The notes: a model not told the origin generated them from the letters alone. 64,000 bases of DNA from Macrostomum hystrix (GCA_950097015.1 CATNEN010000008.1:1178001-1242000); one strand, 5' to 3'; positions 19,601-56,962 are shown, numbered from the stretch's first letter. Program-made: numbers and translations.

Positions 19601-22600
19601 GCGCACACTCACACAGAGGGGTGAACACCAACCCAGAGTTTTTTCAGTCAGTGCACACTCAAACCACAGAAGTGCTCAAACTCAATCTCCAAATTTGACT
19701 AGGCTGGCGCCGACCCCAACGCAGCCAGTAAGGACGCGTACACACCGCTGCACGCCGCCGCCAAGGAGGGACACGAGGAGCCGGTCCGACAGCTGCTGGA
19801 CGCCGGCGCAGACGCTCACGCGGCCACGCGTCGCGGAGCAACGCCGCTGCACACTGCGGCCAAGTACGACAGAGCCGGCGTCATTCACCAGCTGCTGGCC
19901 AGGGCCGATGCCGCAGAGGCCAACGTTCGCGGTCGGAACGGCCTCACGCCTTTGCACCTGGCGGCTCACTACAACCGCATGGCAGCCGCCCGCGCCCTGT
20001 TGAAAGCCGGCGCGAGCCCCGTCTGCGCCGCCAGCAACGGCTTCACGCCGGTGCACATCGCGGCCAGGCGCGGCGCCTCCGAGCTGGCCGCCTGCCTGCT
20101 TGACGCCGCCGGTTCCGGCGCCGCTTGCGCCTCGTCGAAGGGCGGTTTCGCGCCGTTGCACCTGGCCGCGCAGGAGGGCCACGCCGAGCTCTGCGACCTG
20201 CTGATTGCCCGCGGAGCGCGAGTTGATCAGGCCTCCAATGGCGGCGTGGCCCCGCTGCATCTAGCCGCTCAGGTGAATTCACGATGTACTCCGCAAAGCC
20301 GCAAATTTGTAATGGAGAAAATTTAAATAGATTCAGATCCAGAGATGACGCATTTGACCCTCGCGCTGAAGTCCCTGAGCTCGACTGAGACTTCCTCGGG
20401 GAGGCCACAGTTTAATTTATCTAAAGTACATGCAAGAGACTATCAACCGAGTAAGTTGTCTGTCAAGTGGCAGAGGGATCTAACGCGCCTTTTAGCCTGG
20501 AGAAGGCTTTGGGCTTGTCGTGTGATTTTCGACTATGAGGGCCAACTCCGAAGGCAGGGTATTTGTACACTGCCTGAAAATAATAAAAAAGGCATATGTA
20601 CAAACTTATGCCAGTTTGCTCCTGCGCACATATACTTTTACATTTAAAACTGTATCTGTACCTGCACACAAACATACTACAGGAGGACCGTCTGGCAGCG
20701 GCTGAGACGCTGGTCGTTCGCCACGGCGCTCAGGTGGACCCGACCACCCTGGCAGGCTTCACACCTCTACACGCCGCCTGCTATTTCGGCCGTCTGTCAG
20801 CCGCCCGCTTCCTGCTGGGCCACGGGGCTGCGTCTTCGGCGAGAGCCAACTCTGGCAGCTCCACGCCGCTTCACCTGGCAGCTCAGGAGGGCCACCTGCA
20901 GCTGGTGCTGGCGCTGCTGGCTGGGGGAGCTGAGCCCAGGCCTCTAAATGTGGTGAGGCGGTCAACTTGAAACCCTACAATGAACCAGGACTCCCCACAA
21001 TAAACTAAACCAGGACTCCCCACAATGAACCAGAATTACCTACAATAAACCAGAACTCCTCACAATGAACCAGAACACCCACAATGAACCAGAACTCCCC
21101 ACAATGAACCAGAACTCCTCACAATGAACCAGAACACCCACAATGAACCAGAACACCCCACAATGAACCAGAACACCCCGCAATGAACCAGAACACCCGC
21201 AATGAACCAGAACACCCCGCAATGAACCATGACTACCCACAATGAACCGGGACTTCCCACAATGAATAAGGAGACCCACAATCAACCAGGACACTACACA
21301 ATTACGAGCCCGTAATTAGGGCACTCGACTATAAACCACACACTAAAAGGGAGTGAGTGGCAAAGCGGTCAGCGCATTTGCCTCTCGCACGAAAGTCACC
21401 GAGCTTGATTCCGCGGCGAGGCCACGTTTATTTGGGGCTTTTCGCGCTATTTTCGTCCTCGACGGCCAATTTTTAAAGTCACAGCGAAAGTGAAAGTGAC
21501 AATGAGAAAGTCAGAACCAGATGTGAGCGGATGCCTGCGTTCGGTATCAGCTATAGGAGTCAGCTATTTGGCTCCTCTAAACCTGGACTAGAGACTCACA
21601 ATGAACCAGCACAACGCACACTATACCTGATACAAGAAACCTGTTTGAGCAGAAATTAGATTAAACTATCAAACTCTGGAATAAAAACAGGACAGAAAAC
21701 TAATTAGTGTTTTCCTAATGCTCATCGAAAAAAGTGTGTAAAATTTCTAGTTCTCTACTTATATTAGAGTAATGAATGTGTTGCAAATATCGTAGATCAG
21801 AAAAAAAGAAATTTAATTAAGAAATTTATCGCCTGCTCTCCAGCACGGTCACACGCCGGCCCAGTTAGCTCGATTCCGCGGTCATCGAGAAGTCTTCGAA
21901 GCTCTCCGTCAAGCTGAAGGCGGGGCCAGCGTGCACACCTGGGAAGAGGAGGAAGTGACCACAATCGAGGAAACTGTGGAGATCTGCCGCCCGGACACCT
22001 TGGTGGAGCAGAACATGTCCGATTCAGACGAGGATGCTGGTAGGCCTACTCACGAACTGGACCTCTTCAAACTCAGGAACTGGGCCTCTTCAAACTCACG
22101 AACTGGACCTCTTCAAACTCACGAACTGGACCTCTTCAAACTCACGAACTGGGCCTCTTCAAAATCACGAACTGGACCTCTTCAAACTCACGAACTGGAC
22201 CTCTTCAAACTCACGAACTGGACCTCTTCAAACTCAGGAACTGGACCTCTTCAAACTCACGAACTGGACCTCTTCAAACTCAGGAACTGGGCCTCTTCAA
22301 AATCACGAACTGGACCTCTTCAAACTCACGAACTGGACCTCTTCAAACTCAGGAACTGGGCCTCTTCAAAATCACGACTGGGCCTCTTCAAAATCACGAA
22401 CTGGACCTCTTCAAAATCACGAAATGGACCTCTTCAAACTCACGAACTGGGCCTCTTCAAAATCACGAACTGGACCTCTTCAAACTCACGAACTGGACCT
22501 CTTCAAACTCACGAACTGGACCTCTTCAAACTCACGAACTGGACCTCTTCGAATTCACGAACTGGACCTCTTCGAATTCATGAACTGGAGCTCTTCAAAC

Positions 22601-34600: not shown

Positions 34601-37600
34601 CCCGGTCGGGTCAGCCGGCCGCCGCAGCTCAACGATGGCGAGGGCTTGGCTTGTCGAATTCTGGAATTCGGCTGCAGCTGCAAAGCCTTCGCCAACCCCG
34701 TGCTGCTGGAGGTGCCGCACATGGCCTCGCTGAGGGACACGGAGCGAGAGGTCGTTGTATACAGGTGGGTTCTAGAATCAGATTCTACTATCAGAGTTGA
34801 ATAAAGTAGAATAGAATAGAATAGAATAGAATATAATTGAATAGAACGAAAGTTGACGGAATCGGATGCAAAATAATTGAAACGAAACACGCATGTGATA
34901 TTGTAAGAGGGTATACAATGAATAGTGTCGAACACATGACACAACTGACTTAAAACTGTCGCCTCAGGTCGGACACTGGCGAGACCTGGAAGGAGCACTC
35001 GCAAGAAGCCACAGAGCAGGCGGTGCTGGATGTTGTCGGCGGCTTCTTCGGCAGCCCGCTGGAGACCAACGAGGAGCTGCGCCGGAAGCGCATTGTACGC
35101 ATCCTGACCGCCAGCCTGCCGCAGTACTTCGCCCTGGTGACGCGGCTACGTCAGGAGGCGGCGTTCATCGGGCCGGAGGGCGGCGTCATCGGCGCCACCC
35201 TGTCTGGCGGCCGCATTCAGTCGGTGTTCCCCGATGGCGCCCTCACCAAGAAGATTCGCGTCGGCGTCCAGGTGAGAGAGTCGGTCTGTTTGCGCTTATC
35301 TTTGTGTGTCATGGCATTAATAATTTGCAGAGTGCTGCAGACAGTGAGGCTTCATTTGATGACAGCCGACCAAATTTGCGTGCCTGCATGAACCCTAAAG
35401 GCACACACGCAGGCACGCAGTTGAAGACGTTCTATGTACATCTGTGCTGACTTTGGCATTGTCAGGTAGTGTAAACACACACCGGGCCTTAAAGAGGGTC
35501 CGCCCTCATGGGGGTCGCAACGGGCTCTCAGGCCCTCTCCCTTTAATCGAGCTCAGAGAACTTGGTGCGAGAGTCAGCTTTCCCGAAAACACCACCCGAA
35601 ACCCCCCTTCTAGGTGTTCCCGATCCCGGCAGAGGCGGCTGCCCGACTATTTGGCGGCTCCGATCAGCGCCGCATCGCCGCCTCACCGGTTGTGACCATC
35701 GAGCCACGGCGTCGCAAATTTCACAAGCCGATCACCCTCACCCTGCCTCTGCCGTCAACTTCAACGACAAAGGCAACGGCATCGGCTGCAGTCAGCACGC
35801 CGCCCACGCTTCGCCTTCTGTGCAGCATCACCGGCGGAGCTCAGCCGGCCACCTGGGAGGACATCACCGGCTCCACGGCGCTCTCACACGTGAAGGACAG
35901 CGTCTCTTTCACCACGACAGTGAGCGCCCGGTTCTGGCTAGTCGACTGTCAGAATCCAGCCGAGGCGGCCGAGATGGCCGGCCGGCTCTACAGGGAGGCG
36001 TCGGCTGTGCCCTACATTGCTCGCTTCGTGGTCTACGCTAAACGGACGCGTCTGGACGAGGCCAGGCTGCGGTGTCTCTGCGTGACGGACGATCGGGTGA
36101 GAGAGATTACGTTCCGAACATCACACTAGAGTAGCTATAGAACAGGGGTCGGCAAAATTTTTACCAAGCTTATTACAAAGGGAGAACCTAAAGACGACAG
36201 CGGGCCACATTGACGGTAGAAATACGAGTATTACGAGTATATGAAACAGGATACTGTATGTAAAACGGCCCGGATTTGGGAGCTTTGAGGACCGACCCCC
36301 GGAGAAGCAGATGAAATTTCGGCTGCATCTTTACGAGTATATACCCCCACTGGCAACCGGAAAATCGCAGGCGGACAAAACTCTCGAATCAGCGCAAGGC
36401 TATGAACGGAAGGCGGAGTCTCGCGAAGTTGAGATCCTCGACGGACGCCCGTTGTGGATCGAAGGCCTGGACAATCTGGCAACATTCCCTGTGGCTGCTG
36501 AGTCGCGCAGTCTGTTTGACAATCAGCTACACCAGCAACAGCAGCAGCAGCCGCCGTTCTTCACTGTCCGCGCCTTTCGCGAAAACCGTCTCACTTGCGG
36601 GGCGCGACCGCGCGACGCTGCCCAGCCGGCCGCCGGCCGGATCGCCTTCCTGGCCGAGCCCAGGACCTTGGCGACGCCTCCGTCTGCTGCAGCGGCTGCG
36701 ATTTGCACCCTGGAATTGGCCCTGCCAGACTATCAAGGACCTCCGGTGCCGTTGCCCCAGACGCCTGCCAAGCCTCTATTTGTGTCGCAGGAAGTGCCAA
36801 CTCCGAAGAAAAAGGCGAAGATGCCGACGGTGCGGACCTCCGAGCCAGTGGCGGCACAAGTGGTGGTGGAGCCGGAGCTGATCGCAACGGTGGACCCGAA
36901 CCATGGCGTTACCCGATTGCGTAGCGCCGAAGAGGAAGCCGCCGCTCGCAATAACAAGACGGAGGCCTATCTGGAGCTGACTCGCGCGCTGGACGAGCTC
37001 ATGCCGGAGCCGAAGCTCCTCGTAATGGGATCGGAATTGGACGACAAAGGTGAACTTTTTTAGATGCCGGCTTTTTTGAGTCTTTTCCACTTTCAAAACG
37101 GAAATGAGAAACTGTTCCCTTAACCGATCTAGAGCCCGTAGAGGAGTCCGAAATACTGTCATCTCGAGTGCAGGACTCACCAAAGCGAGCTGCAGCCCGC
37201 TCTGAAGCCGTCGAAGAGCTTCTGTCTAGTCTGGACGTTCGTCAGGACCAGTCGATGGCACCGGAGGCTGACACACCGGAAGAAGGTGAAGAATCTAAAA
37301 GACCTTTGAAATTTTTAGCACTGAGGAGTACTAGATAGTGAAAAAAATTGACCTAACACAATAGCCCTTTCTCTGTTTTTCAGAGGTGAATGTTCCTAAG
37401 ACTGTAAGTCAAGTTCACGCTCAGGTGCACACATCTCCTGAGGCCAGGGTCGAAGGTAAGTGCGTATTAAAGGAAACGCCATTTCCAAAGTTTCGTCTTT
37501 TAAATCAAAGTTTAAACTACGTTCGATGCACTTTCCAGCCTCAGTTGAGGAGACGCTTGAGAAGACTGATGCTAGGCAGGACCAATCGATGGCACCTGAA

Positions 37601-40600
37601 GCTGGGACACCCGAAAAAGGTCAGTCAGTCGTCCCAAATGTCAGAAATAAAAGCTCGCAGTTTTAACTAAACTAGTTTCAAACAGCAAGAGACCAAAATG
37701 TTGCTTTCATTTTGTTCGCAGTTATCGAGGTTCCTAAGACAGTTCAGCCGACTCAGGCACCGCCAACTCTACGCGATGAAGGTGAGCAGCAATTATCTAT
37801 AGATGTTTTTAGAGGAGCTTTAAAATACACTGAAAAAATCTTTCTCAAATGTACAGTCGAGGAGACTGTTCAAAGGAAGGATGTTAGTCAGGACCAATCC
37901 ATGGCTCCGGAGGCTGGAACACCTGAGGAAGGTGAGAATTGAAGCGAGTCGTTTAGTAACAAGCTAGAATCTGTTTGGTTTCTCAAAGCATTCCTGTCGT
38001 CCTGCCTTCCAGTGATAGAGGTACCAAAGACAGTTAGTCAGACCCACGCCGAACGACAGCTGACACCAACGGGCCCTGCTGATGACGAGTACGGTAAGAT
38101 ATTTTTATCTGTCAATGATCAGTGACGAATAGTTCTCTTGAATAACTAATTCACTTTACTTTCTAGAGTCCTCGTTGGCAGCTGAAGCAGCTGTGAAGAA
38201 GCAAGAAGAAGTCGCCGACGCAGAGGACGGTGAGCAGAAGGAAATTGCTTTTCCTCACAATTCGAATACTGAAAGCAAAAGTCACACATGACCTATGAGA
38301 CAGGCCTTATTAAGTACAATAGTTAAGGTAGAATGGTCTTTGAGATTTACGAGTGATATTCATATGTTATCGTATGTTCTTTCCTTAAGTTGTCTATGTA
38401 TACAAGTATGGAAATTTGTAAGAAGGTGAATTAATTTCATCACAGCTGACAATGGGTTCGAAATCACTGAACTAGAGTAAGTAGTCAGTGTATGGGAAAT
38501 TTTAAGAGACTCAGTGGCTAGCGAAATGACGGCACCAAGCAGGTAGTCAGTCCTTGAGATCCGCTGCCTCGGAGGCTGGCGAGGACTCCGGCACCTGGGC
38601 CACGCCAGACTCGCAGCGGCCCAGGCTGCGTCGTCAAAGGCAACCACGCAACGACAGCTCAGCTGACCGGTCCACGACAACTTCCGCTGATTTTACGGAC
38701 GTCACAACCGAGGCAAGCGAGGACACCCTGCTGGGTGCTGATGATCCATTGTCAGCGTCAGCTGATGAAGCATGGCGCGAGGCGCTGATGGAAGCTGCTT
38801 CGGCATCAGTGTCCGCCACGGCAACGGCTACGTCGACGTCATCGACGTTGGAGGAATCCACTGGGTGTCGCCCTAGCAGTGTCGTGGAAGGTATTCCAGC
38901 AGAAGCCTGATCTTGCCGTTCGATCGCCTTGCTGATTTTTTCTCCCAAATACGGAACTTTGCTGTTGGGAAGTAAATATAGGCAGGTTTGCATGAGAAAA
39001 ACCCTTAAGGAGATAGTAGCGCATGGTTACTGTATGACTAAAATTGTAAGGCATGTTAGAAAGCGCAATTTGCTGTGACCTAGCTACCAATCACCCCGCA
39101 TCCCCCCTACCCAAACTGTCCCAAACAAAAAACCTGCCAGCAACAGCGACTGCCGCCAGCTTCACGGACGCACAGATCACCGTGCCGAGGCGACACGCTT
39201 CGCCACCCACTCGTCTGCCGGTGGCCATCGCTGCGAGTGATGCCTCCAAAGACGTCACAGGTGACGTCACGGCGGAATCACCTGGCGGCGACACGCGGCG
39301 AAACTCGTTGAACTCGCTAATGCTGCGAAGCATGGAATTCGAGGAGAGCCTGCGCAGCAAGATGCGCCACGTCAGCATTGACGACGCGTTAAATGCGCCG
39401 GACGCCACGCCGCAGGTTGAAGAGAAGTCGATCTCGGAACTGACCCGTTCAATGTCCGGCGCTGATTCAGGTTCAGAGGCACCGACACCCATTGAAGAGA
39501 TGCCACCGATTGGCTTCAACGAAGCCACAGCCACGGGATCTAGGCGCAGTGCTACGGAAGACGTATTCTACGAGAGTGCTTCCTCAACGTCCTACACTTC
39601 AGCTTCGGCTACGGAGGGCGAAGACGAAGGGGAAGATGAGGAGACGCCTGCAGCAGCTGAAAAGACGAGCTTCTTCCGGCCGGAAGCTTTACCTCTCGGG
39701 CGGGGACTTTTTCACGAGGGTGGCATCAGACCGGAGGAGCTGGTCAGTCCGGCCAAGGACGAGTTGGCCAGTCCGCAGCAGGTGGGCGCAGCCGCATTCT
39801 CCAGACTGGTATCAGCTGAGTACGCTTACTCGCGAATAGAGGAAAAGCTGGACAGCCCCGTGCAGAGTCCGGTTGATGCCTACAAAAAGTTTCCAGGCGT
39901 TGGAGGCAATGGAGCTGCTGCTGGAGGTTCAGTGGCTGCATCTCCGATGGCTGAGCGCATGACGCAAATTGCTGAGGAAGAAGCGCAAGAAGAGGGGCAA
40001 GCTATCCATGATGTTCCAAGTCTTGGTGAAAAGGATCACACTCCGGTCCAAAGCGAACCAGCTCACTTTGAAGAGAAAGAGAAAGTTCATGATAAACCAG
40101 TCCACAGAGAACCAGTGCACTTTAAAGAGGAAGAGAAATTTCATGATCAACCAGTCTACAGAGAACCAGAACACTTTGAAGAGGAAGAGAGAGTTCATGA
40201 TGAACCAGTCCACAGAGAACCAGAACACTTTGAAGAGGAAGAGAAAGTTCATGATGAACCAGTCCACAGAGAACCAGTGCACTTTGAAGAGGAAGAGAAA
40301 GTTCACGAGGAACCAGTCCACAGAGCTCCAGAACACTTTGAAGTGGAAAAGAAAGAGCACGAGGAACCAGTCGACAGGCAAGAACCAGTGGACTTTAAAC
40401 ATGATGAGAAGGTCCGAGAGGAACCAATCCATAGTAAAGAAGAGCACTTTGAAGAGGAAGAGAAAGTTCACGACGAACCAGTCAACAGCCAAGAACCAGT
40501 GCACCTTGAAGAGGAAGAGAAAGTTCATGACGAACCAGTCCACAGAGAACCAGTGCACCTTGAAGAGGAACAGAAAGTTCATGATGAACCAGTCCACAGA

Positions 40601-43600
40601 GAACCAGTGCACCTTGAAGAGGAAGAGAAAGTTCATGACGAACCAGTCCACAGAGAACCAGTGCACCTTGAAGAGGAAGAGAAAGTTCATGACGAACCAG
40701 TCCACAGAGAACCAGTGCACCTTGAAGATGAAGAGAAAGTTCACGAGAAACCAGCCCACAGGGAAGAACCAGAACACTTTCAAGAGGATGAAAAGGTCAA
40801 AGAGGAGCCAGTCCACAGTGAACTAGAGCACTTTGAAGAGGAAGAGAACGTTCACGACGAACCAGTCCACAGAGAACCAGTGCACTTTAAAAAAGAAAGA
40901 GAGAGTTCATGATGAACCAGTCCACAGAGAACCAGTGCACCTTGAAGAGGAAGAGAAAGTTCACGAGGAACCAGTCCACAGGGAAGAACCAGAACACTTT
41001 CAAGAGGATGAAAAGGTCAGAGAGGAGCCAGTCCACAGTGAACAAGAGCACTTTGAAGAGGAAGAGAACGTTCACGACGAACCAGTCCATAGGCAAGATC
41101 CAGTGCACTTTAATGAAGAAGAGAAAGTTCACGACGAGCCAGTCCACAGGGAAGAACCAAGTGCACTTTGAGGAGGATCAGAAGGTCCGTGAAGAAGCAG
41201 CTCTAGTTAAACAAGTGCCGATAACAAATGAAAACACGTCACAAGTCAAACCTGCTCATGAGGAGCCATTACTCAAAGAGGAAGACATTAAAATTGAGCG
41301 TGATGAGGAAATGCTTGTGCTGGCCGTTCATCTTAAAATGCGAAGTGCTAACGAGACTCCAATGTCAGTAAGTTCTGTTAATAAATCTTACTGAAGAAAG
41401 AATAGACGAAATGGTACAATTGCACACAAAAGAAAGTTCCGAGGATGAGCCAGATCAATCAGAAGGATTGCAAACAGCAAAAGAAATGCATGCAGAAAAA
41501 GAAATTAATCAGAAAGAAGTACAAGACAAGGAAAAGGAACACGAGAAGCAAGATCCCTTTGAACATAGAGTTCACGATAAGCCCGAGCCCATTCATGTCG
41601 AAGGAAATGTTCATGAGAAACCAGAGCACCTAAAAGAACAGGCTCATATCGAGCCGGTTCATGTCGAAAAGAAGGTTCATGACGAGCCAAAGCACGTCGA
41701 AAAGAAGGTTCATGACGAGCTCGTTCATGTCGATGAGAAGGTTCATGACGAGCCAAAGCACCTGAAAGAGAAGACTTATGACGAGCCGGTTCACGTCGAA
41801 GAGAAGGTTTATGGTGAGCCGATTCATGTCAAACAGAAGGTTCACGATGAGCCTGAGCACCGGGAAGAGAAGGTTCATGATGAGCCAAAACACGTCGAAG
41901 AGAAGGTACATGATGAGCAGCTTCACGTCGAAGAGAAGGTTCATGATGAACCGATTTTCATCAAAGAAAAGGTTCATGATGAGCCTGAGCACCTGGAAGA
42001 GAAGGTTCATGAAGAGCTGGTTCATGTCGAAGAGAAGGTTCATGATGAGCCTGAGCGCCTGAAAGAGAAGGTTTATGACGAGCCGGTTCACGCCGAAGAG
42101 AAGATTCATGACGAGCCTGAGCACCTGAAAGAGAAGGCTCATGACGAGCCGGTTCACGTCGAAGAGAAGGTTCATCACGAGTCTGAGCACCTGAAAGAGA
42201 AGGTTTCTGACGAAGAGAAGGTTCATGAAGAGCTGGTTCATGTCGAAGAGACGATTCCTGATGAGCCTGAGCGTCTGGAAGAGAATGTTTATGACGAGCC
42301 AGTTCACGTCGAAGAGAAGGTTCATGACGAGCCGGTTCACGTCGAAGAGAAGGTTCATGAAGAGCTGGTTCATGTCGATGAGAAGGTTCATCGAGATTCT
42401 GAGCACCTTGAAGAGAAGGTTCATGACGAGTTAAAGCACGTAGAAGAGAAGGTACATAACAAGCCAGCTTATGTCGAAAACAAGGCTGATAATGTGCCGG
42501 TTCATGTCGAAGAGAAGGTTTATGAGGAACCTGAGCAGCTGGAAGAGAAGGTTCATGACGACCCGGTTCACGTCGAAGAGAAGGTTCATGAAGAGCTGGT
42601 TCATGTCGAAGAGAAGGTTCATGACGAGCCAAAACACGTCGAAGAGAAGGTTCATGAAGAGCTGGTTCATGTCGAAGAGAAGATTCATGATGAGCCAATT
42701 CACGTCAAACAAAAGGTTCATGACGAGTCGGCTTATGTCGGAGAAAAGGTTCATGACGAGCCGGTTAACGTTGAAGAGAAGTTTCATGACGAGCCAAAGC
42801 ACGTCGAAGAAAAGGTTCATGACGAGTCGGCTTATGTCGAAGAAAAGGGTCATGACGAGCTGGTTCACGTCGAAGAAAAGGTTCATGGCGAGCCTGAGCA
42901 CCTTGAAGAGAAGGTTCATGACGAGTCGGCTTATGTCGGAGAAAAGGTTCATGACGAGCCGGTTAACGTTGAAGAGAAGTTTCATGACGAGCCAAAGCAC
43001 ATCGAAGAGAAGTTTCATGACGAGCCAAAGCACGTCGAAGAGAAGTTTCATGACGAGCCAAAGCACGTCGAAGAGAAGTTTCATGACGAGCCAAAGCACG
43101 TCGAAGAGAAGGTTCATGACGAGCCAAAGCACGTCGAAGAGAAGGTTCATGACGAGCCAAAGCAAGTGGAAATGAAGGTTTATGACGAGCCGGTTCACGT
43201 CGAAGAAAAGGTTCATGGCGAGCCTGAGCAAATTGAAGAGAAGTTTCACGACGAGCCAAAGCACGTCGAAGAGAAGGTTCATAACGAGCCAAAGCAAGTG
43301 GAAATGAAGGTTTATGACGAGCCGGTTCACGTCGAAGAAAAGGTTCGTGGCGAGCCTGAGCACGTCGAAGAGAAGGTTCATGACGAGCCAAAGCAAGTGG
43401 AAATGAAGGTTCATGACGAGTCGGCTTATGTCGAAGAAAAGGTTCATGACGAGTCGGCTTATGTCGAAGAAAAGGGTCATGACGAGCCGGTTCACTTCGA
43501 AGAGAAGGTTCATGACGAGCCTGAGCACGTCGAAGAGAAAGTTCATGACGAGCCGGTTCACGTCGAAGAGAAGGTTCATGATGAGCCAATTCACGTCAAA

Positions 43601-46600
43601 CAAAAGGTTCATGACGAGTCGGCTTATGTCGGAGAAAAGGTTCATGACGAGCCGGTTAACGTTGAAGAGAAGTTTCATGACGAGCCAAAGCACGTCGAAG
43701 AGAAGGTTCATGACGAGCCGGTTCACGTCGAAGAAAAGGTTCATGACGAGTCGGCTTATGTCGAAGAAAAGGGTCATGACGAGCTGGTTCACGTCGAAGA
43801 AAAGGTTCATGGCGAGCCTGAGCACCTTGAAGAGAAGGTTCATGACGAGCCAAAACACGTCGAAGAGAAGATTCATGACGAGCCTGAGCACGTCGAAGAG
43901 AAGGTTCATGACGAGTCGGCTTATGTCGGCGAAAAGGTTCATGACGAGCTGGTTCACGTCGAAGAGAAGGTTCATGACGAGCTGGTTCACGTCGAAGAGA
44001 AGGTTCATGACGAGCCTGAGCACGTCGAAGAGAAGGTTCATGACGAGCCAAAACACGTCGAAGAAAATGTTCATGACGAGTCGGCTTATGTCGGCGAAAA
44101 GGTTCATGACGAGCCGGTTTACGTCGAAGAAAAGGTTCATGGCGAGCCTGAGCACATTGAAGAGAAGTTTCATGACGAGCCAAAGCACGTCGAAGAGAAG
44201 GTTCATAACGAGCCAAAGCAAATGGAAATGAAGGTTTATGACGAGCCGGTTCACGTCGAAGAAAAGGTTCAGGGCGAGCCTGAGCACCTTGAAGCGAAGG
44301 TTCATGACGAGCCAAAACACGTCGAAGAGAAGGTTCATGACGAGCCAAAGCAAATGGAAATGAAGGTTCATGACGAGCCAAAACACGTCGAAGAGAAGAT
44401 TCATGACGAGCCTGAGCACGTCGAAGAGAAGGTTCATGACGAGTCGGCTTATGTCGGCGAAAAGGTTCATGACGAGCTGGTTCACGTCGAAGAGAAGGTT
44501 CATGACGAGCTGGTTCACGTCGAAGAGAAGGTTCATGACGAGCCTGAGCACGTCGAAGAGAAGGTTCATGACGAGCCAAAACACGTCGAAGAAAATGTTC
44601 ATGACGAGTCGGCTTATGTCGGCGAAAAGGTTCATGACGAGCCGGTTTACGTCGAAGAAAAGGTTCATGGCGAGCCTGAGCACATTGAAGAGAAGTTTCA
44701 TGACGAGCCAAAGCACGTCGAAGAGAAGGTTCATAACGAGCCAAAGCAAATGGAAATGAAGGTTTATGACGAGCCGGTTCACGTCGAAGAAAAGGTTCAG
44801 GGCGAGCCTGAGCACCTTGAAGCGAAGGTTCATGACGAGCCAAAACACGTCGAAGAGAAGGTTCATGACGAGCCAAAGCAAATGGAAATGAAGGTTCATG
44901 ACGAGCCAAAACACGTCGAAGAGAAGATTCATGACGAGCCTGAGCACGTCGAAGAGAAGGTTCATGACGAGTCGGCTTATGTCGGCGAAAAGGTTCATGA
45001 CGAGCTGGTTCACGTCGAAGAGAAGGTTCATGACGAGCCTGAGCACGTCGAAGAGAAGGTTCATGACGAGCCAAAACTCGTCGAAGAGAAGGTTCATGAC
45101 GAGCCTGAGCACGTCGAAGAGAAGGTTCATGACGAGCCAAAACACGTCGAAGAAAATGTTCATGACGAGTCGGCTTATGTCGGCGAAAAGGTTCATGACG
45201 AGCCAAAGCAAATGGAAATGAAGGTTCATGACGAGCCAAAACACGTCGAAGAGAAGGTTCATGACGAGCCTGAGCACGTCGAAGAGAAGGTTCATGACGA
45301 GTCGGCTTATGTCGGCGAAAAGGTTCATGACGAGCTGGTTCACGTCGAAGAGAAGGTTCATGACGAGCTGGTTCACGTCGAAGAGAAGGTTCATGACGAG
45401 CCTGAGCACGTCGAAGAGAAGGTTCATGACGAGCCAAAACTCGTCGAAGAGAAGGTTCATGACGAGCCTGAGCACGTCGAAGAGAAGGTTCATGACGAGC
45501 CAAAACACGTCGAAGAAAATGTTCATGACGAGTCGGCTTATGTCGGCGAAAAGGTTCATGACGAGCCGGTCAACGTTGAAGAGAAGTTTCATGACGAGCC
45601 AAAGCAAGTGGAAATGAAGTTTCATGACGAGCCAAAGCAAATGGAAATGAAGTTTCATGACGAGCCAAAGCAAGTGGAAATGAAGTTTCATGACGAGCCA
45701 AAGCAAGTGGAAATGAAGTTTCATGACGAGCCGGATAACATCGATGAAAAGGCTCATGATGAGCTAGAGCTCGACGAAGAGAATGTTATTGGCGAGCCAG
45801 ACTTCATCGAAAAGAACCTTTTTGACGAGCCAGAGCATGGTGGTCCAAATGATGTTAAAAACACAATTCTTGTTGAACCAGAGCAGGCTACTGAAAAAAT
45901 TCATGAGAAACAGGTGCATGTAGCAATGAAGGAGCCTGTGTACACCGATGAGGTAGAGGTGCTTCCTGTGCAACTTCGAAAGCCTGATTATTCACTAGAC
46001 AGTAGCATGCAGCATTTGGAGTCCGTTGAAGCAGATTCCTTTCAGCGGGAAAGGGCTGCAACTGAGTCGCACACAGAGTCGGATCATCGGGAGGAGAGGT
46101 CTGTTCGCTCTGAAGTTCTGATGCAGCGAGAGAGAGCTCACTTCACAAGCGAACAGTTTGTAGCCGGGTCAGTGCATAGCGTTTCATTTCGATCGGAACG
46201 AAGCAGTGCTGTAGCTACAAGAGCAGAGGAGTCTTGCAGTGTCGTTCAAAGGCAAGAGATTTTTTCACATGGGGAAACGCATGTCTCAGCAACTCGATCT
46301 GCGGAGGTGTCGGAAAGGCTTCAGTTGGTCTCAAGCAGCGCACATAAAGAAATTAGCAAGTCGTTCCATGGCGAATCGACGACAACCTTGCATGAAGAAG
46401 TTCATCAAATAACCAGAAAAGAACTGGAAGAAGTTCAGCAACCAACCTACAAAGAGCATGAAAGGTTAGAACAGCCAAAGGATGAAGAGGACGATAACCT
46501 CGGTCACCCAACCTACGCAGAACGTCAAGAGGTAGAACAACCAGAGTACAAGGAGCCTGAAGAGGTTGAACAACAAGAGTACAAGGAGCTTGAAGAATTT

Positions 46601-49600
46601 GAGCACCCGACCTTCAAAGACCTGGAACAGGTTCAGCAAACAACCTGCGAAAACCCTAAAGAGGTTGAACAACCAGAGTACAAAAAGCCTGAAGAAGTTG
46701 AACAACCAGAGTACAAGGAGCCTGAAGAGGTTGAACAACCAGAGTACAAGGAGCCTGAAGAGGTAGAAAAACCAGAGTACAAGGAGCCTGAAGAAGTTGA
46801 ACAACCAGAGTACAAGGAGCCTGAAGAGGTTGAACAACCAGAGTACAAGGAGCCTGAAGAGGTAGAAAAACCAGAGTACAAGGAGCCTGAAGAGGTTGAA
46901 CAACCAGAGTACAAGGAGCCTGAAGAGGTTGAACAACCAGAGTACAAAAAGCCTGAAGAAGTTGAACAACCAGAGTACAAGGAGCCTGAAGAGGTTGAAC
47001 AACCAGAGTACAAGGAGCCTGAAGAGGTAGAAAAACCAGAGTACAAGGAGCCTGAAGAGGTAGAACAACCAGAGTACAAGAAGCCTGAAGAGGTAGAACA
47101 ACCAGAGTACAAGGAGCCTGAAGAGGTAGAACAACCAGAGTACAAGAAGCCTGAAGAGGTAGAACAACCAGAGCACAGAGAGCCTGAAGAATTTGAGCCC
47201 CAAACCTTCGAAGACCTGAAACAGGTTCAGCAATCACCCTACAAAGAGCCTAAAAAGGTTGAGCAACCGCTGTACCAAAAGCCTGAAATGTTTCAGCAAC
47301 CAACCTATAAAGAGCCTCAAGAGGTTGAACAACCAGAGTACAAGGAGCCTGAAGATGTTGAACAACCAGAGTACAAGGAGCCTGAAGATGTTGAACAACC
47401 AGAGTACAAGGAGCCTGAAGATGTTGAACAACCAGAGTACAAGGAGCCTGAAGATGTTGAACAACCAGAGTACAAGGAGCCTGAAGATGTTGAACAACCA
47501 GAGTACAAGGAGCCTGAAGATGTTGAACAACCAGAGTACAAGGAGCCTGAAGATGTTGAACAACCAGAGTACAAGGAGCCTGAAGATGTTGAACAACCAG
47601 AGTACAAGGAGCCTGAAGATGTTGAACAACCAGAGTACAAGGAGCCTGAAGATTTTGAGCACCCAACCTTCAAAGACGTGGAACAGGTTCAGCTAACAAC
47701 ATACGAAGAGCCTGAAGAGGTTGAGAAACCGCAGTACCATAAGCCAGAAAAGGCTGAGCAGCCAGCCTACAAAGAGCCTGAAAATATTGACCACTCAAAG
47801 TACAAAGACCCTGAAGAGGTTGAGCTCTCGACCAACACAGAGCCTGAAGAGCTTGAACAACCTGAGTACAACGAGCCTGAAGAGGTTGAGCGACCAGTGT
47901 ACAAGGATCCTGAAGATGTTATACAATCAGAGTACAAGGAGCCTGAAGAAGTTGAACAACCAGAGTATAAGGAGCCTGAAGAGATTGAACAACCAGAGTA
48001 TAAGGAGCCTGAAGAGATTGAAAAACCAGAGTGTAAGGAGCCTGAAGAGATTGAACAACCAAAGTATAAGGAGCCTGAAGAGATTGAACAACCAGAGTAT
48101 AAGGAGCCTGAAGAGATTGAACAACCAGAGTGTAAGGAGCCTGAAGAGATTGAACAACCAAAGTATAAGGAGCCTGAAGAGATTGAACAACCAGAGTATA
48201 AGGAGCCTGAAGAGATTGAACAACCAGAGTATAAGGAGCCTGAAGAGATTGAACAACCAGAGTATAAGGAGCCTGAAGAGATTGAACAACCAGAGTATAA
48301 GGAGCCTGAAGAGATTGAACAACCAGAGTATAAGGAGCCTGAAGAGATTGAACAACCAGAGTGTAAGGAGCCTGAAGAGATTGAACAACCAAAGTATAAG
48401 GAGCCTGAAGAGATTGAACAACCAGAGTATAAGGAGCCTGAAGAGATTGAACAACCAGAGTATAAGGAGCCTGAAGAGATTGAAAAACCAGAGTATAAGA
48501 AGCCTGAAGAGATTGAGCCCCCAACCTTCAAAGACCTGGAACAGGTTCAGCTAACAACCTACGAAGAGCCTGAAGAGATTGAACAACCAGAGTGCAATGA
48601 GCCTGAAGATGTTGATCAGCCAAAGCACAAAGTTGTCGAGACCTACAAAGACCTGGAACGGGTTTATCAACCAGCCTACGAAGAGCGTGAAGAGCCTAAA
48701 GAACCGCAGTACAAAGAGCTTGTGCGCCCAACCTACGAAGAAACCGAGAAGCTGGTGATGCCATCATTTGAAAAGCGAACAGACACCATGGCAAGACTGG
48801 AGTTGCATGGTATTCCCAGCGAACAGGAAGCGGAATTTTTCGGAGAGTCTGTCGAGCATTTAAGGGCTCATGATGAAAAAGTACCGGAAGAGCAGGAAAT
48901 TTTTGAGTACAAAGAGACCGCAGAGACTGTGGAACCCAGCACGGTGCCCAAAACCGTAGCCACCTTCGAGCAAAGTCATCCGTCTGGAAAAGAGGACGAC
49001 TGGGTTGTTTGTGAAAGAGCGAATCAGCTGGTGGAGTCGAGTGCGATGACGGAGGAGTCGACGCTGATGTCACAGCCGGGAACTCGAGTCTATCACGGAA
49101 TTCAGGCCTTCCCGCTGGCAAAGGCAGAGGAGGATGCGGCGACCGACCTACAGAAACAGACGCAGCCGCAGCAGACGCCAAAATTTCCAGCGGCTGCGGT
49201 AAATATCGCCGCGTCGCCGGCCTCGCCCGGCTCTGGACCTCCGTCGCCGACGCCAGAGTCGTTTGACTCTGTCATTCGCCGCTCGCTACCTTCAGCTGCT
49301 GTAGTTGCAGCGTCCGAATCTTCAAAAGCTTTGTCGCAGTCACCCGAGTCTGAAGAAGAGGAAATGACAGAGAGGAAAGCAGAAGAAGGCAGACAAGAAG
49401 ACGAGAGTGATGCGGACGAAATCAGCCTCGGCGCTGGCGTTGGCTCTCCTATGAAGGATGAAGACGACCAGTTCGAAATGGAATCCGAGACTGAGGTGAG
49501 AGATCCCGATGAAGCAGACGCAATGGAGACAGCAGCGGCAGCTTTCGTGCTACCTCGCGATACATCCTCGCTGAGCCAGGATGCCTCAAGGTCGAGTGAA

Positions 49601-52600
49601 ATGCCGAGCTCGGGTATCAGCGTCACCGGTGGCGGCGGCGGCGCCTACGCCAGCTGCGAAGCCACCGGAATCGGAGCTTCGGCCACCACAGACGACTTCG
49701 GCAGCATCGCGGGACTGGATGATAGCGGCTTCATTCTTGTCAGGGCTGCGGAGGGCGGAGCCGATACCAGCGAAAGTGACACAGAGCAACAGCTACCCAG
49801 ACGGTACGGTATTAGAGACGACGACGCCACAGACGTGTCAATGTCTCTCGCCAGCGAGGCAGCCTCCACTCTTGCCGGGCCAGATACCATGCAGAACTCC
49901 GAGATTGATGAAGCTGAAAGCATCGGTGAAGCTGACGTTGGTGATAAAGATGTTGAAGAGGCTGCCGTTGCGCTTGATACGCCGGAGGCACTGGTGTCGG
50001 CTATGGCAACGCTGAGAGCCACCAGAGTCCAGCCCCCTTCGCCTACGCGGGAGGACGAAGAAAGCAGATTCGAAGATCATAAGTCGAGCGACTCGTTTGA
50101 AGAAGTTAGTGTGCCGACTCCATTGGAATTAGCAGTGGAGGAAGGATCAACACTAACCGACTCAGAAGTCGAGTCGGTGGCTTCTCAGCTGGTTCTGGCG
50201 GCTCTAGCAAGCGCCTACGATACGTGGGAGAAATCGCCAGAGACCATGCAGGCTGCTCCAGAGTTGGCGCCCCTAGACACGCCGGAGCTTGAGCAGCGTG
50301 CTCTGGCCGCCGAGATGTCCGCTGAGCAGCATTTAATGGAGCTCGGTGGCGAACTGCTCGAAGGAGGCGAAGCCGAAATCTTAGAATTCGAAGCTGATGA
50401 TGACGAGGTCGACGTTGCGGAGGCCGAAAAGCCCGATCCTGAGGCGGTCATTATCGATGACAGCGTCCTGTCGCCAATCATCGAGCTGAAAGAGACACCG
50501 GAGAGTTCGCCAGAGCAGCAGCAACCACAGCCGACTTCAGCGACTGTGCCGATCCCCCAGAGGCCGGCATCGCAACCGCAGAGGACCTCTCAGATTCCGC
50601 GTCCAAGTGGCGCGGTGCAAAAGATAATTGGTTTCGAGATCGAAGAGGAAATGTCGGTGGAAATTTCCGAGGCATCCAGCCTCTCGAGCCAATCGACTGT
50701 GGTGCTGCGGCACCATCAGCAGCAAGACAGATTTCCCGAACTCATGGCAGAGTCGTGCAGCTCGGACGCCACCTCGGCGCAAGATCCTCTGCTGTCTGAG
50801 CTATCCGCCTCCCGCGACTCTTTGGAGGACTACGAATTGTTGTCCTCGCCGAGTGCGGCTTCGGCTGGTTCGCCAGCTGCCGCGAGTTTGGCGGCCCCGC
50901 CTGGCCGATCAGATCCGGTGCGGCTGGCCAAGCGGCAGCAGATGGCGGCAGCATCCTCGAGCGCCGCGCCTGCTGGCAGCGGCAGTCCTGTCAGCGGCCA
51001 AGCTCGATCGGTAGACAGCCGTTCGGCCTCTTCCTCGATTCCCTCGTCTCTGTCCGAGTTCGAGCGCCTTGAGCTGGAGATTGCTCAGCAAGTGAGCAGC
51101 ACCGGCTCACTGAAGAAGTCCTCCTCTAGCGGCGAGGCAGCGGCCAGTACTTCCGTCGGTGGCCGCTCTGTCAGCTCCTCGCTAGTCGAGTTTGAACGGC
51201 TCGAGCGCGAATGCGAAGCTGCAGCGGCTGCTACTTCCACCGGCTCGCCAGGGGACTTCTGGCGCCAGCAGCCGCTAGACGAAAGCCCGCTGGAGGAGGA
51301 GGAAGAGGAGGATGACGACGGAGCGCGTCTAGCAGCCGACTCGAAATCTTCCTCGCTCGACGAATTCGAGCAGCTGGAGCAGTCGGCTGCCGATGAGGAG
51401 CTATTTAGTGAGGCCTCAAAGATCGCTGAAGCTTTGGAGGCCGGCCAGCTGCCGACCGTAGGCGAGATGTCACCTGAGGAAGAGTCTGCTGCGGCATCAG
51501 CGGCCGCGTCTGCGGTGAATCCGCCTTCTACTGCAGCCGCCGCATTGGTCGCAACCGGTGATAGCTATCAACGCATTCACGAGATCCTGGCACATGGCTC
51601 TTCCCAGGAGGAACGCATCGATGCAGACAGCCTGAGCGGGCACGAAGCGGCACCTGACGAAGACGCGAAAGCCAAGAATGAGGAAGAACGCCCAGTTGGA
51701 GAAGAATATGATGATGACGAAGACGATGATGACGACCTGTCCTCGGTTCGCCAGCCATCGGTACTCGCGGCGCCAGTTGCGCAACAGTCCGGTGCTGCCG
51801 CAGCCATGATGGGCGCCAGCATGACGTCATCGCTTCTGGCGCCAAGTGAAGCCGACTCGCTGTCCTCGTCCACCGATGCCGCTGCGCTGATGGCAGCCAG
51901 CATCGACAGTATCGAAGGCATGCGCAGCGAAGAGGCAGCTGGCGGAGGTGGCAGCGGCTGGGCGCTTGCCTACTCTCTGCCCAGCGAAGGCGTCCGTGTT
52001 GTACGCGAGCAGTCGGCGATGGAGGCGTCCACGGACAGTTTGGATTTGGACGCGGAGGAGGCGGCGGCAGCTGCGGGCAGGACAGGCGGTGGTGCGATCT
52101 TGAACTTTTGCATTTACTTATTTGCTGTGCATGGCGTTAACTTATCTTCTATGAATTGTCATGCAGTGTGTTAGTTTTACATGTTTGCCTGTTTGCGACA
52201 TCGTGGCTGTTTGGGAAGGTTCTGCTTCTGCTCAGTTTAATTTATTTATTAAAAATTTGCTTTCGGTTCTTTCAGAAATGAGAAATTTCTGAAAAATGCG
52301 GAAAATCGTAGTAGCTTTTTAAACAATATTAATACTCGTACTACTGCTCATACTGAAGTAAGTAGGATTAAAGCTCGCATTCGAGTTTTTGACCATTGGC
52401 CATAACGCATCAAGCCAATGGGCACGAGGAAGAGAGCTTAGATTTTTTAGCAAAAACTTGCTTGAGGCTAGAGCTAGCCGAGCTCCAGATGAGAATACCC
52501 GGAACACCATGAGCGACTCAGTGGACGAGACGGCATCGGATGAGCGCCAGCAGCTGTTCAGGACGGAGAGCGCCGGGTCGGACAGCGACAGCGGCGAGTC

Positions 52601-54577: not shown

Positions 54578-56029
54578 GTTGATCAAAGCCCATTGTGGTG
54601 TAGCGATGTACAGGTGGTGCGGTACATAATTGGGTCTTTAAGTAGTAAAACTTTCAAGCAAATTTCCCTGATTTCAATAGTGCTTCAAGCTGCTGAAAAT
54701 CATTCATCAATTAAAAACTTTTCTTTGCAATTTTCACATTAAAAGACCAATCAATTTCAGCTATGCACATGCAACATCTGGAAACCATTTTTTCTCTGCT
54801 GTCACTAATAATAATTTTCTAGTCAGCTTCAATTTTTTTAATTTAATTATATACAAGTATCTTATATTACCATAGTTTGCAACGGCCGTCAATACGGATG
54901 GGTCACTATTGTTGCTTTTTAGTTCTAGAAATTTCTGCAACCCTCGAAGCGATCGCTTATCTTCATGGATCGCTAATTGTTTTGCTAGCAGTTTCAAAAA
55001 TACCTGTCGTACCTTTTAACGCTTATAATTTATGTACTCGTGCGTACATGTTGCTAAAGACGCTAGTTTATTTAGTCCTGCGAACCATTTCAACTTGCAA
55101 ACCGGTAAATATTTCTAAAAGTACCCTTTCTCCTTTCAATAATCCTAAGTCAAGAGCGCAATTGTGAGGCAACAATCCGTAACTGTAAGTCTGCACCGCC
55201 CGTTTCGACTTTCGATACGCTCACAGCTCTGCTTTTCTTTCATAGCCAGCACTTAGTTCCAGTCATTTTGTTTCAGCCATTTCTTCAGTAACAAATCTGA
55301 CGTCGCTAAATAATCATTCGATTCAATCTCGTGCTCAAAGTATAGAATAAATTTTTAGTTTTTGAAAAGCTATAACAAATCAGACATTGACAGAAACGAC
55401 TTTGAACACTCGAATGTCAATTATTTAACGATTTTATTTATAAAAACGGAACTAAAATGAAAAATAGACATTTTTTCTCGTGTTCAATAGCCCGATTCCA
55501 GGTGAAGAGGCGCGACCGGGGGGAGACAGAGGTGTCACATTCGGGAAGATGATGTGAGAATGAATTATTCCTTTCCAACGCGATGGCAGCTGGGACTGAT
55601 AATTCCTGTCTAGTCGTTCGCCTCTCTTCACACTGCAAAGGCTGCTTTTTGTACCGGGTTTCAATCCAAAAAAATTACTTGTCACCTTCTGCTGGCCCAA
55701 CCGTTTGTTATGCCTTTTTCCACCGCTTTTTCTTGACTATTTTATCTTACAAAACAAGATATCTGCATCGATATTACTGTGTACTGTGTTATTGCTGTTG
55801 TTTTTTAATTCTGAAACACGAAAATATCAAATTTACTACATTTAGTTTTCTTGAAAAATTTAAAATATATTTTATGGTACGTCCACGTAGCACAAGAACG
55901 AACTAAAGTGGGCCGAAAAATTCACTGCCATTGCTATAGCTTTCGTGATATAATATTAGAATATTTTCTAGTATTTTTTCTTTCTCAAAGCATTTTAAAA
56001 ACCACAACATTTTTTGAATTGTCACTGCT

Positions 56030-56962
56030 TCATCTGACAGCTCACTGCTTCATCTGACAGCTCACTGCTTCATCTGACAGCTCACTGCATCATCTGACAG
56101 CTCACTGCATCATCTGACAACTCACTGCATCATCTGACAACTCACTGCATCATCTGACAGCTCACTGCATCATCTGACAACTCACTGCATCATCTGACAA
56201 CTCACTGCATCATCTGACAGCTCACTGCATCATCTGACAACTCACTGCTCCATCTGACAACTCACTGCTTCATCTGACAACTCACTGCATCATCTGACAA
56301 CTCACTGCTTCATCTGACAACTCACTGCATCATCTGACAACTCACTGCTCCATCTGACAACTCACTGCTTCATCTGACAGCTCACTGCATCATCTGACAA
56401 CTCACTGCATCATCTGACAACTCACTGCATCATCTGACAACTCACTGCTCCATCTGACAACTCACTGCTCCATCTGACAACTCACTGCTTCATCTGACAA
56501 CTCACTGCTTCATCTGACAGCTCACTGCATCATCTGACAACTCACTGCATCATCTGACAGCTCACTCCATCATCTGACAGCTCATTGCATCATCTGACAA
56601 CTCACTGCTCCATCTGACAGCTCATTGCATCATCTGACAACTCACTGCATCATCTGACAACTCACTGCATCATCTGACAACTCACTGCATCATCTGACAA
56701 CTCACTGCATCATCTGACAACTCACTGCTCCATCTGACAACTCACTGCTTCATCTGACAACTCACTGCTTCATCTGACAGCTCACTGCATCATCTGACAA
56801 CTCACTGCATCATCTGACAGCTCACTCCATCATCTGACAGCTCATTGCATCATCTGACAGCTCACTGCATCATCTGACAGCTCACTGCATCATCTGACAG
56901 CTCACTGCATCATCTGACAGCTCACTGCATCATCTGACAGCTCACTGCATCATCTGACAACT
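56030..56962. repeat. Minisatellite, 20 nt (CTCACTGCATCATCTGACAA)
   Basis: Direct periodicity. Confidence 0.92.

What the first reader, a model, noticed from the sequence alone, without database searches (positions are those of the whole stretch)
39084..52091. A ~13-kb single giant ankyrin exon with its own repeat architecture
Seen: after UPA and the mini-exons, one uninterrupted coding block of about 4,300 aa contains three successive acidic tandem arrays (18-aa, 11-aa His-rich, 11-aa Tyr/Pro) and then a non-repetitive motif-rich tail. Established: giant exons define neuronal ankyrins (vertebrate 480-kDa AnkG and 440-kDa AnkB, Drosophila Ank2-L/XL, C. elegans UNC-44L), and the Ank2-XL tandem repeats set microtubule spacing and axon calibre. 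Inference: this is an invertebrate giant ankyrin, possibly from a flatworm, whose repeats expanded independently as a length-tuned spacer. Automated annotation would probably fragment it.
Basis: partly seen in the sequence, partly recalled or inferred. Interest (0 to 1): 0.85.

Follow-up and report, generated by a model that had tools for sequence, protein, structure and literature searches.

The report
Flatworm giant ankyrin exon, transcribed
This is a real, expressed, roughly 13-kb alternative exon of a Macrostomum flatworm ankyrin gene that adds about 4,300 acidic, mostly repetitive residues; it puts flatworms on the list of animals with giant ankyrins but is not a new kind of gene.

Summary
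The three tandem arrays are real: 54 nt x ~21 (40046-41177), 33 nt x ~126 (41603-45790) and 33 nt x ~69 (46442-48718). A non-repetitive tail follows.

The block is not uninterrupted as written in the window. The frame breaks at about 40896, 41160 and 41391. Contigs of one DNA run and three spliced RNA runs each leave out one letter at those places, so the breaks are assembly errors. With those three letters removed the exon has 4,316 codons and no stop.

RNA contigs join the UPA exon, through seven mini-exons, to the block at 39141, not 39084. A second isoform skips the block (38890 to 53379). The 3' donor at 52091 fits the phase but is not verified.

The gene has ANK repeats, ZU5 and UPA. No death domain was found. 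The nearest relatives are Macrostomum lignano ankyrin models. The ortholog model has the conserved flanks and tail but none of these arrays, and the paralog carries different arrays.

This matches the known bilaterian giant-ankyrin pattern (Jegla 2016), which had not been reported for flatworms. The spacer and microtubule-link function is inferred, not tested. The scan also noted a paralogous giant ankyrin elsewhere in this genome (s1-300496).

The parts
17191..20949 (+). Exons encoding the ANK repeat domain of the same gene
   Evidence: Pfam Ank/Ank_2, E 1e-33 to 1e-60; collinear tblastn match of M. lignano ankyrin P0004
34379..37049 (+). ZU5 and UPA exons (spectrin-binding cassette)
   Evidence: Pfam ZU5 1.9e-22; UPA_2 6.8e-17 and 3.8e-10; RNA donor at 37049
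37133..38229 (+). Seven mini-exons (153, 72, 81, 60, 75, 81 and 63 nt) separated by GT..AG introns of 73-102 nt
   Evidence: Spliced contigs in RNA runs X2, X3 and X5; no joints in DNA run X1
38543..38890 (+). Alternative 348-nt exon (phase 1-1) of the short isoform, spliced on to 53379
   Evidence: Joint 38229>38543 in X3 and X5; loose letters behind 38891 match 53380-53403 exactly
39141..52091 (+). Giant alternative exon: 12,951 nt in the assembly, 12,948 nt (4,316 codons) after three surplus letters are removed
   Evidence: Joint 38229>39141 in X2 and X5; no joints inside 39141-41640; tail words held at 0.82-0.92 by the seven smaller runs X2-X8, three of which (X2, X3, X5) were shown to be spliced RNA; no stop after correction. 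The 3' end is inferred from phase only
39141..40045 (+). Non-repetitive N-terminal part with blocks conserved in the M. lignano ortholog and paralog (for example [40 protein letters not shown])
   Evidence: 66% identity to P0005 804-1126; the same blocks occur in P0004; RNA contigs cover it
40046..41178 (+). Array 1: 18-aa His-rich acidic unit, about 21 copies
   Evidence: TRF period 54; register view; covered in pieces by RNA contigs
40896..40899 (+). Surplus letter 1 of the assembly (in an A run)
   Evidence: One letter left out in X1 and X5 contigs
41159..41161 (+). Surplus letter 2 of the assembly
   Evidence: One letter left out in X1, X2, X3 and X5 at full depth
41391..41392 (+). Surplus letter 3 of the assembly; removing it abolishes the frame-0 TGA
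   Evidence: One letter left out in X1, X3 and X5
41603..45790 (+). Array 2: 11-aa unit [11 protein letters not shown], about 126 copies in register; 196 His
   Evidence: A 677-nt exact duplicate at shift 528 (from 43834); pN/pS 0.46. The unit shares a 30-nt core with array 1
45791..46441 (+). Unique spacer 2 (217 aa)
   Evidence: No other + frame has a stop-free stretch of 80 aa or more lying within it; no homolog found
46442..48718 (+). Array 3: 11-aa unit [11 protein letters not shown], about 69 copies in three homogenised blocks punctuated by a [10 protein letters not shown] motif
   Evidence: Ten identical units from 47324; pN/pS 0.46
48719..52091 (+). Non-repetitive Ser/Ala/Glu-rich tail with conserved short motifs
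   Evidence: P0001 E 1.5e-217; alignment A1; AlphaFold2 model has 835 of 997 residues under pLDDT 50
50582..50605 (+). RTSQIPRP: the one SxIP-type motif in a basic patch, conserved in ortholog and paralog
51044..51388 (+). Three SSLxEFExLE motifs, each a predicted helix
   Evidence: Conserved in L001 and in the distant contig L002; helices 649-667, 692-713 and 751-780, with 10-residue block-mean pLDDT peaking at 80-82
52506..52905 (+). Conserved coding element after the giant exon ([18 protein letters not shown]), probably a further exon; it changes frame near 52690 in the assembly
   Evidence: tblastn of the P0005 C-terminus; not verified by RNA
53379..53403 (+). 25-nt micro-exon reached by the isoform that skips the giant exon
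54367..54577 (+). Probable shared terminal coding exon with stop
   Evidence: 69% identity to the end of P0005; acceptor and phase fit; not verified by RNA

Best explanation
The block is the alternatively included long exon of a canonical ankyrin gene of a Macrostomum flatworm. Shown here: it is transcribed and spliced to the UPA-side exons at 39141. Its true reading frame is continuous for 4,316 codons. A second isoform skips it. Inferred: including it adds about 497 kDa of strongly acidic, disordered polypeptide (pI 4.5, net charge about -830) between the membrane- and spectrin-binding core and a short common C-terminus. About 2,500 residues are three Pro-punctuated Glu-rich arrays, resembling titin's PEVK region in composition. 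They most likely act as an extended, self-repelling spacer whose length changes by unequal crossing-over. The conserved, non-repetitive tail carries the binding sites. These are one SxIP-type motif in a basic patch, a likely EB-protein/microtubule link as in 480-kDa ankyrin-G, and three helical SSLxEFExLE motifs with an unknown partner. I put the identity at about 0.9 and the spacer-plus-microtubule-link mechanism at about 0.45.
For: Domains: ANK, ZU5 and UPA upstream. RNA: GT..AG joints appear only in runs X2, X3 and X5, including 38229>39141 (seen in two studies), and there are no joints inside 39141-41640. The tail is held by all seven smaller runs of the species at 0.82-0.92 of words. Frame: the three breaks are absent from DNA and RNA contigs, and the corrected frame is open. 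Coding constraint in the arrays: periods are multiples of 3, the register is kept over 4.2 kb and 2.3 kb, the third codon position varies most, and pN/pS is 0.46. Homology: M. lignano models join ZU5-UPA to the same flanks and tail. Composition: S+E 29.5% and S,E,T,D,K,P 54.5%, against about 25% and >55% reported for ankyrin long exons (PMC5135030). Skipping isoform: 38890>53379. Charge and disorder. SxIP conserved in ortholog and paralog. 480-kDa ankyrin-G binds EB proteins through SxIP motifs, and one added motif was enough to make 270-kDa ankyrin-G track microtubule ends (PMC6839619).
Against: No reads were laid on 41641-52091, so transcription of arrays 2 and 3 as one piece rests on the open frame, the codon pattern and the expressed flanks. 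The 3' donor is weak and unverified. The M. lignano ortholog model lacks the whole middle part, which could mean that part is removable. No death domain was found. Tissue specificity is unknown. One SxIP motif in 4,316 residues is thin evidence. The arrays' copy number comes from an assembly that made three indel errors within 500 nt.
Confidence: 0.85

Rival explanations
1. The block is two or more exons. The N-terminal part and the tail are coding, while arrays 2 and 3 (about 7 kb) are usually removed as an intron, as the M. lignano ortholog model suggests.
For: P0005 passes from the N-terminal part to the tail with only about 70 residues between. No reads were laid on 41641-48700. Arrays alone can stay open by chance: a 1,108-aa open frame lies on the minus strand at 42431-45757.
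Against: RNA contigs run unspliced through array 1 and spacer 1 into the first units of array 2. The unique spacer 2 has no stop-free stretch of 80 aa or more in any other + frame. Both arrays are in frame with both flanks. pN/pS is 0.46 and the third codon position varies most. P0005's bridging residues contain no unit of these arrays, as a collapsed transcript would.
Confidence: 0.07
2. The giant exon is a terminal exon. Translation runs to the stop at 52172-52174 and the transcript ends near the ATTAAA at about 52248, so the giant isoform lacks the common C-terminus.
For: All in-phase donors near the end are weak. A stop and an ATTAAA follow closely. In the paralog the frame stops at the equivalent place.
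Against: The last 27 codons are hydrophobic, unlike the rest, and are not conserved. An end at 52091 makes the exon exactly phase 1-1, like the alternative exon it replaces. Both M. lignano models continue into the counterpart of 52506-52905.
Confidence: 0.2
3. The arrays are binding modules rather than a passive spacer. The roughly 250 His of arrays 1 and 2 (HDEP/HVEE context) would bind Zn or other metals, or sense pH. The Tyr of each array-3 unit would be a phosphorylation-dependent docking site.
For: His is 14-15% of arrays 1 and 2. Protonating it would change net charge per residue from -0.22 to -0.08 in array 2. His and Tyr positions are among the best kept in the consensus. In mammalian giant ankyrin-B, 15 short repeats bind microtubules directly (PMC7401806).
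Against: No homolog or known metal site was found. The ortholog model and the paralog lack these units, so the function would be species-specific. The ankyrin-B repeats are basic (pI 10.6), whereas these are acidic.
Confidence: 0.15
4. The block is a decaying pseudo-exon carrying three frameshifts.
For: Three frame breaks in the window's letters.
Against: All three are absent from contigs of the DNA run and of three RNA runs. The rest of the frame is intact over 12.9 kb.
Confidence: 0.01

Closest known systems
[quoted passage not shown] 2016, PMC5135030), for example the 13,344-bp exon of Ciona ankyrin
   Same: A canonical ANK/ZU5/UPA gene with one multi-kb exon that is alternatively included. 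The exon size is within the reported range (8103 +/- 4850 bp). The Ser/Glu-rich composition fits. Repeat arrays are lineage-specific (reported range 5 to >160 copies of 36-228 bp).
   Different: Flatworms are not mentioned in that paper's main text. The 33-bp units are slightly shorter than the reported range. Three arrays lie in one exon. No death domain was found, so the protostome rule 'long exon after the death domain' cannot be applied.
Drosophila Ank2-XL (93 repeats of 76 aa, proposed as a molecular spacer; as summarised in PMC5135030)
   Same: A protostome giant ankyrin whose bulk is a tandem array read as a spacer between membrane skeleton and microtubules.
   Different: Unit length and sequence are unrelated. 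In Drosophila the long exons follow the death domain. Here three arrays of 11-18 aa units are followed by a conserved tail.
Vertebrate 480-kDa ankyrin-G and 440-kDa ankyrin-B
   Same: The long exon comes directly after UPA. The insert is disordered. There is an SxIP-type motif (ankyrin-G has ten; PMC6839619). There is a lineage-specific expansion of a short repeat (15 x 12 aa in mammalian ankyrin-B; PMC7401806).
   Different: No detectable sequence homology. The ankyrin-B repeats are basic and bind microtubules directly, whereas these are acidic. Vertebrate genes keep a death domain after the insert.
Titin PEVK region (a comparison of how it may work only; from my own knowledge)
   Same: Pro/Glu/Val/Lys-dominated short repeats giving a disordered, extensible segment.
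   Different: A different gene family and cell type; no homology is claimed.

Membership tests
Giant (long-exon) isoform of a canonical ankyrin | ANK repeat domain plus ZU5-ZU5-UPA cassette in the same gene | tested here: met
   Pfam hits; collinear match of the 24-repeat-length M. lignano ankyrin P0004. The exact number of ANK repeats in the window was not counted.
Giant (long-exon) isoform of a canonical ankyrin | A single multi-kb exon spliced to the core exons in mRNA | tested here: met
   Joint 38229>39141 in RNA runs of two studies. One contig runs from upstream of 37131 into the exon. No internal joints up to 41640. 41641-52091 rests on the open frame and on word shares.
Giant (long-exon) isoform of a canonical ankyrin | Alternative inclusion: a short isoform lacks the exon | tested here: met
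   Contigs join 38229>38543-38890>53379 and so skip the exon.
Giant (long-exon) isoform of a canonical ankyrin | Composition bias of long-exon polypeptides (S+E about 25%; S,E,T,D,K,P >55%) | tested here: met
   29.5% and 54.5%, compared with PMC5135030. The second value is marginally under.
Giant (long-exon) isoform of a canonical ankyrin | Death domain in the gene | tested here: not met
   No Pfam Death hit in window pieces after UPA, in P0004 or in P0005, including its C-terminus, at E up to 1. Jegla et al. also found none in Branchiostoma and note that it is hard to detect.
Giant (long-exon) isoform of a canonical ankyrin | Neuron-specific expression and axonal role | not testable with these tools
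   The tissue or cell source of the runs is not on record in the tool output, so expression cannot be assigned to neurons.
EB-binding +TIP proteins (SxIP class) | S/T-x-I/L-P in a basic, Ser/Pro-rich, disordered context | tested here: met
   RTSQIPRP has local net charge +4 and is conserved in ortholog and paralog. Binding itself was not tested.

The most novel reading that the evidence does not exclude
All three arrays (about 7.6 kb, 2,500 residues) arose after this species split from M. lignano. The ortholog there would keep only about 70 residues at that place, and each paralog grew its own arrays. Giant-ankyrin reach would then vary several-fold within one genus. Macrostomum would become a natural series for testing whether array length sets microtubule spacing or axon calibre. 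The His-rich arrays might add a pH- or Zn-responsive change of length.
Probability: 0.3. Interest if true: 0.6.

Novelty: new member of a known kind. Interest (0 to 1): 0.4.

Why it matters
It adds Platyhelminthes to the phyla with a documented, RNA-supported giant ankyrin. This fits the single-origin view of Jegla et al. It is also a protostome case in which the long exon follows UPA directly and no death domain is detectable.

It shows how badly such exons are handled in practice. The assembly carries three false frameshifts in 500 nt, and every M. lignano model is partial or skips the middle.

Macrostomum allows RNAi and has transgenic lines and many sequenced congeners. The locus is therefore a practical place to test the spacer idea for giant-ankyrin repeats.

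Tried and rejected
- Mini-intron at 41368 (GTAAGT) to explain the third frame break: no GT..AG pair restores the frame, and the reads show a surplus letter instead.
- One intron removing 40890-41400: no such joint appears in RNA.
- Homolog searches for the tail among proteins of 1,980-6,300 aa, and for spacer 2 plus array ends among proteins of 257-817 aa: nothing found.
- Look-ups of the M. lignano ortholog locus by P0001 and P0005: not on record. Whether the ortholog DNA has arrays could therefore not be checked.
- tblastx of the regions after the giant exon between the window and paralog locus L001: no hit.
- ESM Atlas feature search of the tail: best score 0.83, uninformative.
- PDB sequence search of the tail: nothing.
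- A giant-ankyrin LIR-like reading of EDDWVVC (48992-49012): the paralog aligns with gaps at that place, so conservation could not be shown, and the idea was dropped.
- Relation of array 3 to arrays 1 and 2: not above shuffles.
- The repeat finder on the arrays gave redundant output; my own shift scan replaced it.
- L002 could not be shown to belong to an ankyrin gene, because its giant frame runs off the contig end.
Full report
**Observation.**
The + strand between 39 and 52 kb holds three tandem arrays:
- 40046-41177: period 54, 20.6 copies.
- 41650-45801: period 33, with a 132-nt higher order.
- 46527-48630: period 33, 63.8 copies.

Read as protein in register, these are an 18-aa His-rich acidic unit and about 126 units of 11 aa with consensus [11 protein letters not shown]. 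The third array has about 69 units of 11 aa with consensus [11 protein letters not shown], arranged in three homogenised blocks separated by a [10 protein letters not shown] punctuation. A non-repetitive tail of 1,125 residues follows.

The window's letters, however, do not give one open frame. Frame 1 is open 39050-40909. The repeat then continues in frame 2 to about 41156, then in frame 0 to 41391, and frame 1 resumes from 41372 to 52171.

**Reads.**
Nine public runs hold the tail. I laid four of them on 37000-41640.
- X1 behaves as DNA: one 5.3-kb contig, no joints.
- X2, X3 and X5, from two studies, behave as RNA. Their contigs skip seven GT..AG introns of 73-102 nt between 37049 and 38229.

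From 38229 two paths exist.
- X2 and X5 join to 39141 (acceptor cag|C) and run on into the block.
- X3 and X5 join to 38543-38890, whose continuation matches 53380-53403 exactly.

The block is therefore spliced to the ankyrin core, starts at 39141 rather than 39084, and is skipped in a second isoform. No joint lies inside 39141-41640.

At each frame break the contigs leave out one letter:
- 40896/40899 in X1 and X5.
- 41159/41161 in all four runs, at full depth.
- 41391/41392 in X1, X3 and X5.

The three breaks are surplus letters of the assembly. With them removed, 39141-52091 is 12,948 nt, 4,316 codons, no stop, phase 1 at both ends. The alternative 348-nt exon has the same phase, and that phase reads in frame into the micro-exon at 53379.

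**What the gene is.**
Upstream pieces carry ANK repeats (17191-20323), ZU5 (34379-34801) and UPA (35614-37060). The tail's only strong relative among 1.84 billion representatives is a Macrostomum lignano protein (P0001, E 1.5e-217).

A second M. lignano model, P0005, contains in order:
- ZU5 and UPA, the mini-exons and the alternative exon;
- the N-terminal part of the block and the tail;
- counterparts of 52506-52905, the micro-exon and 54367-54577.

A paralog, PAA50710.1 (P0004), joins 24 repeat-lengths of ANK, ZU5 and UPA to a giant region with the same conserved flanking blocks. The window is therefore from a Macrostomum-like flatworm that is not identical to the M. lignano models (55-77% identity).

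No death domain was found in the window after UPA, nor in either M. lignano model.

**Is the middle coding?**
I could not lay reads on arrays 2 and 3. The indirect evidence is consistent.
- Both arrays keep their 33-nt register over 4.2 and 2.3 kb, apart from one 7-aa slip.
- Both are in frame with both flanks.
- The third codon position varies most (0.29 against 0.20 and 0.14 in array 2), and pN/pS among units is 0.46.
- The unique spacers have no long open stretch in any other + frame.
- As a control, 8 of the 12 minisatellites elsewhere in this window have a period that is not a multiple of 3.
- The tail is held at 0.82-0.92 of its words by all seven smaller runs X2-X8.

**Dynamics.**
- Array 2 contains a 677-nt exact duplicate at a shift of 528 nt.
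- Array 3 contains ten identical units.
- Arrays 1 and 2 share a 30-nt core (25 of 30 bases; none of 300 shuffles reached the score). Array 3 is not detectably related to them.
- The M. lignano ortholog model has about 70 unrelated residues where the arrays lie and contains no unit of them.
- The paralog locus has a 45-nt array and a 60/75-nt array of other sequence.
- A search with spacer 2 plus array ends found nothing.

This agrees with Jegla et al. 2016, who found that only repeats of very closely related species are recognisably homologous. I could not fetch the ortholog's DNA, so absence of the arrays in M. lignano is not proven.

**Properties and likely mechanism.**
The exon encodes about 497 kDa, with 23% Glu, pI 4.5 and net charge about -830. 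S+E is 29.5% and S,E,T,D,K,P is 54.5%, close to the composition signature of ankyrin long exons.

In the arrays about half the residues are charged, net charge per residue is -0.22 to -0.27, and Pro recurs at least once per unit. I read them as an extended, self-repelling spacer; this is an inference.

The tail is predicted disordered (835 of 997 residues under pLDDT 50) with a few confident helices. These include the three SSLxEFExLE motifs, which are conserved in the paralog and in a distant AT-rich eukaryotic contig, L002.

One SxIP-type motif, RTSQIPRP, sits in a basic patch and is conserved in ortholog and paralog. In 480-kDa ankyrin-G, SxIP motifs bind EB proteins, and a single added motif confers microtubule-end tracking. 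A microtubule link through the tail is therefore the most likely working model, and it is untested.

Mammalian ankyrin-B shows that short repeats in a giant exon can expand in one lineage. Those repeats are basic and bind microtubules directly, whereas these are acidic.

**Open points.**
- The 3' end. 52088 and 52091 are the only plausible in-phase donors and both are weak. The frame's own stop is at 52172, and an ATTAAA follows.
- Whether 52506-52905 belongs to the giant isoform. That element also changes frame near 52690 in the assembly.
- Copy numbers of the arrays come from an assembly that is error-prone here.

**Verdict.**
This is a correct and now RNA-supported identification of a giant ankyrin exon in a flatworm. 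It is a new member of a well-described kind, and the proposed function is a reasonable but untested inference.

Noticed in passing
window 40896-41392: The assembly has three single-letter insertions within 500 nt, in or beside the 54-nt array. All three are contradicted by short-read contigs of DNA and RNA. Other open frames in repeat-rich parts of this assembly may be falsely broken.
   Followed up: yes
window 52506-52905: A conserved coding element between the giant exon and the micro-exon ([24 protein letters not shown], 55% identical to M. lignano P0005). The match switches from frame 2 to frame 0 near 52690, in a CAG run. This may be another assembly indel. The element is probably a further exon of the giant isoform.
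   Followed up: partly
window 37133-38229: Seven in-phase mini-exons of 60-153 nt, six ending in ..AAG|GT or ..ACG|GT and encoding similar acidic peptides. They look like an exon-level tandem duplication in the linker after UPA.
   Followed up: partly
window 53379-53403 and 54367-54577: A 25-nt micro-exon and a probable terminal exon ([16 protein letters not shown]...), conserved with M. lignano. Together they would be the common C-terminus of short and giant isoforms. There is no Pfam match and no death domain.
   Followed up: partly
window 3-636, 3550-4136, 5589-6431, 8313-9668, 22048-22613, 23329-24806, 25171-27617, 30327-31018, 33537-34395, 56022-56967, 57576-59180, 59611-60763, 61332-61806: The introns and flanks of this gene are packed with minisatellites of 16-30 nt units (one of 283 nt), up to 2.4 kb long and often strongly strand-skewed. 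The array at 57576-59180 is open in all three + frames and mimics a coding repeat.
   Followed up: no
L001 27093-31342 and 36249-36911 (M. lignano NIVC01003580.1): The M. lignano paralog has a 4.2-kb array of 60/75-nt units (EVTETSETDVQVCPGVTTEL-like, with many indels) upstream of its 5.6-kb giant frame, and a 45-nt x 14.7 array inside that frame. The upstream array may be a second long exon that the gene model omits.
   Followed up: partly
L002 1-12000 (ENA ERZ25333528 contig, GC 32%): An unidentified AT-rich eukaryote has a nearly open frame of at least 12 kb, with at least 12 copies of a roughly 163-aa acidic repeat and a tail with the same triple SSLxEFExLE motif and STDSL motifs. It may be a distant giant-ankyrin tail, but the frame runs off the contig end.
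   Followed up: partly
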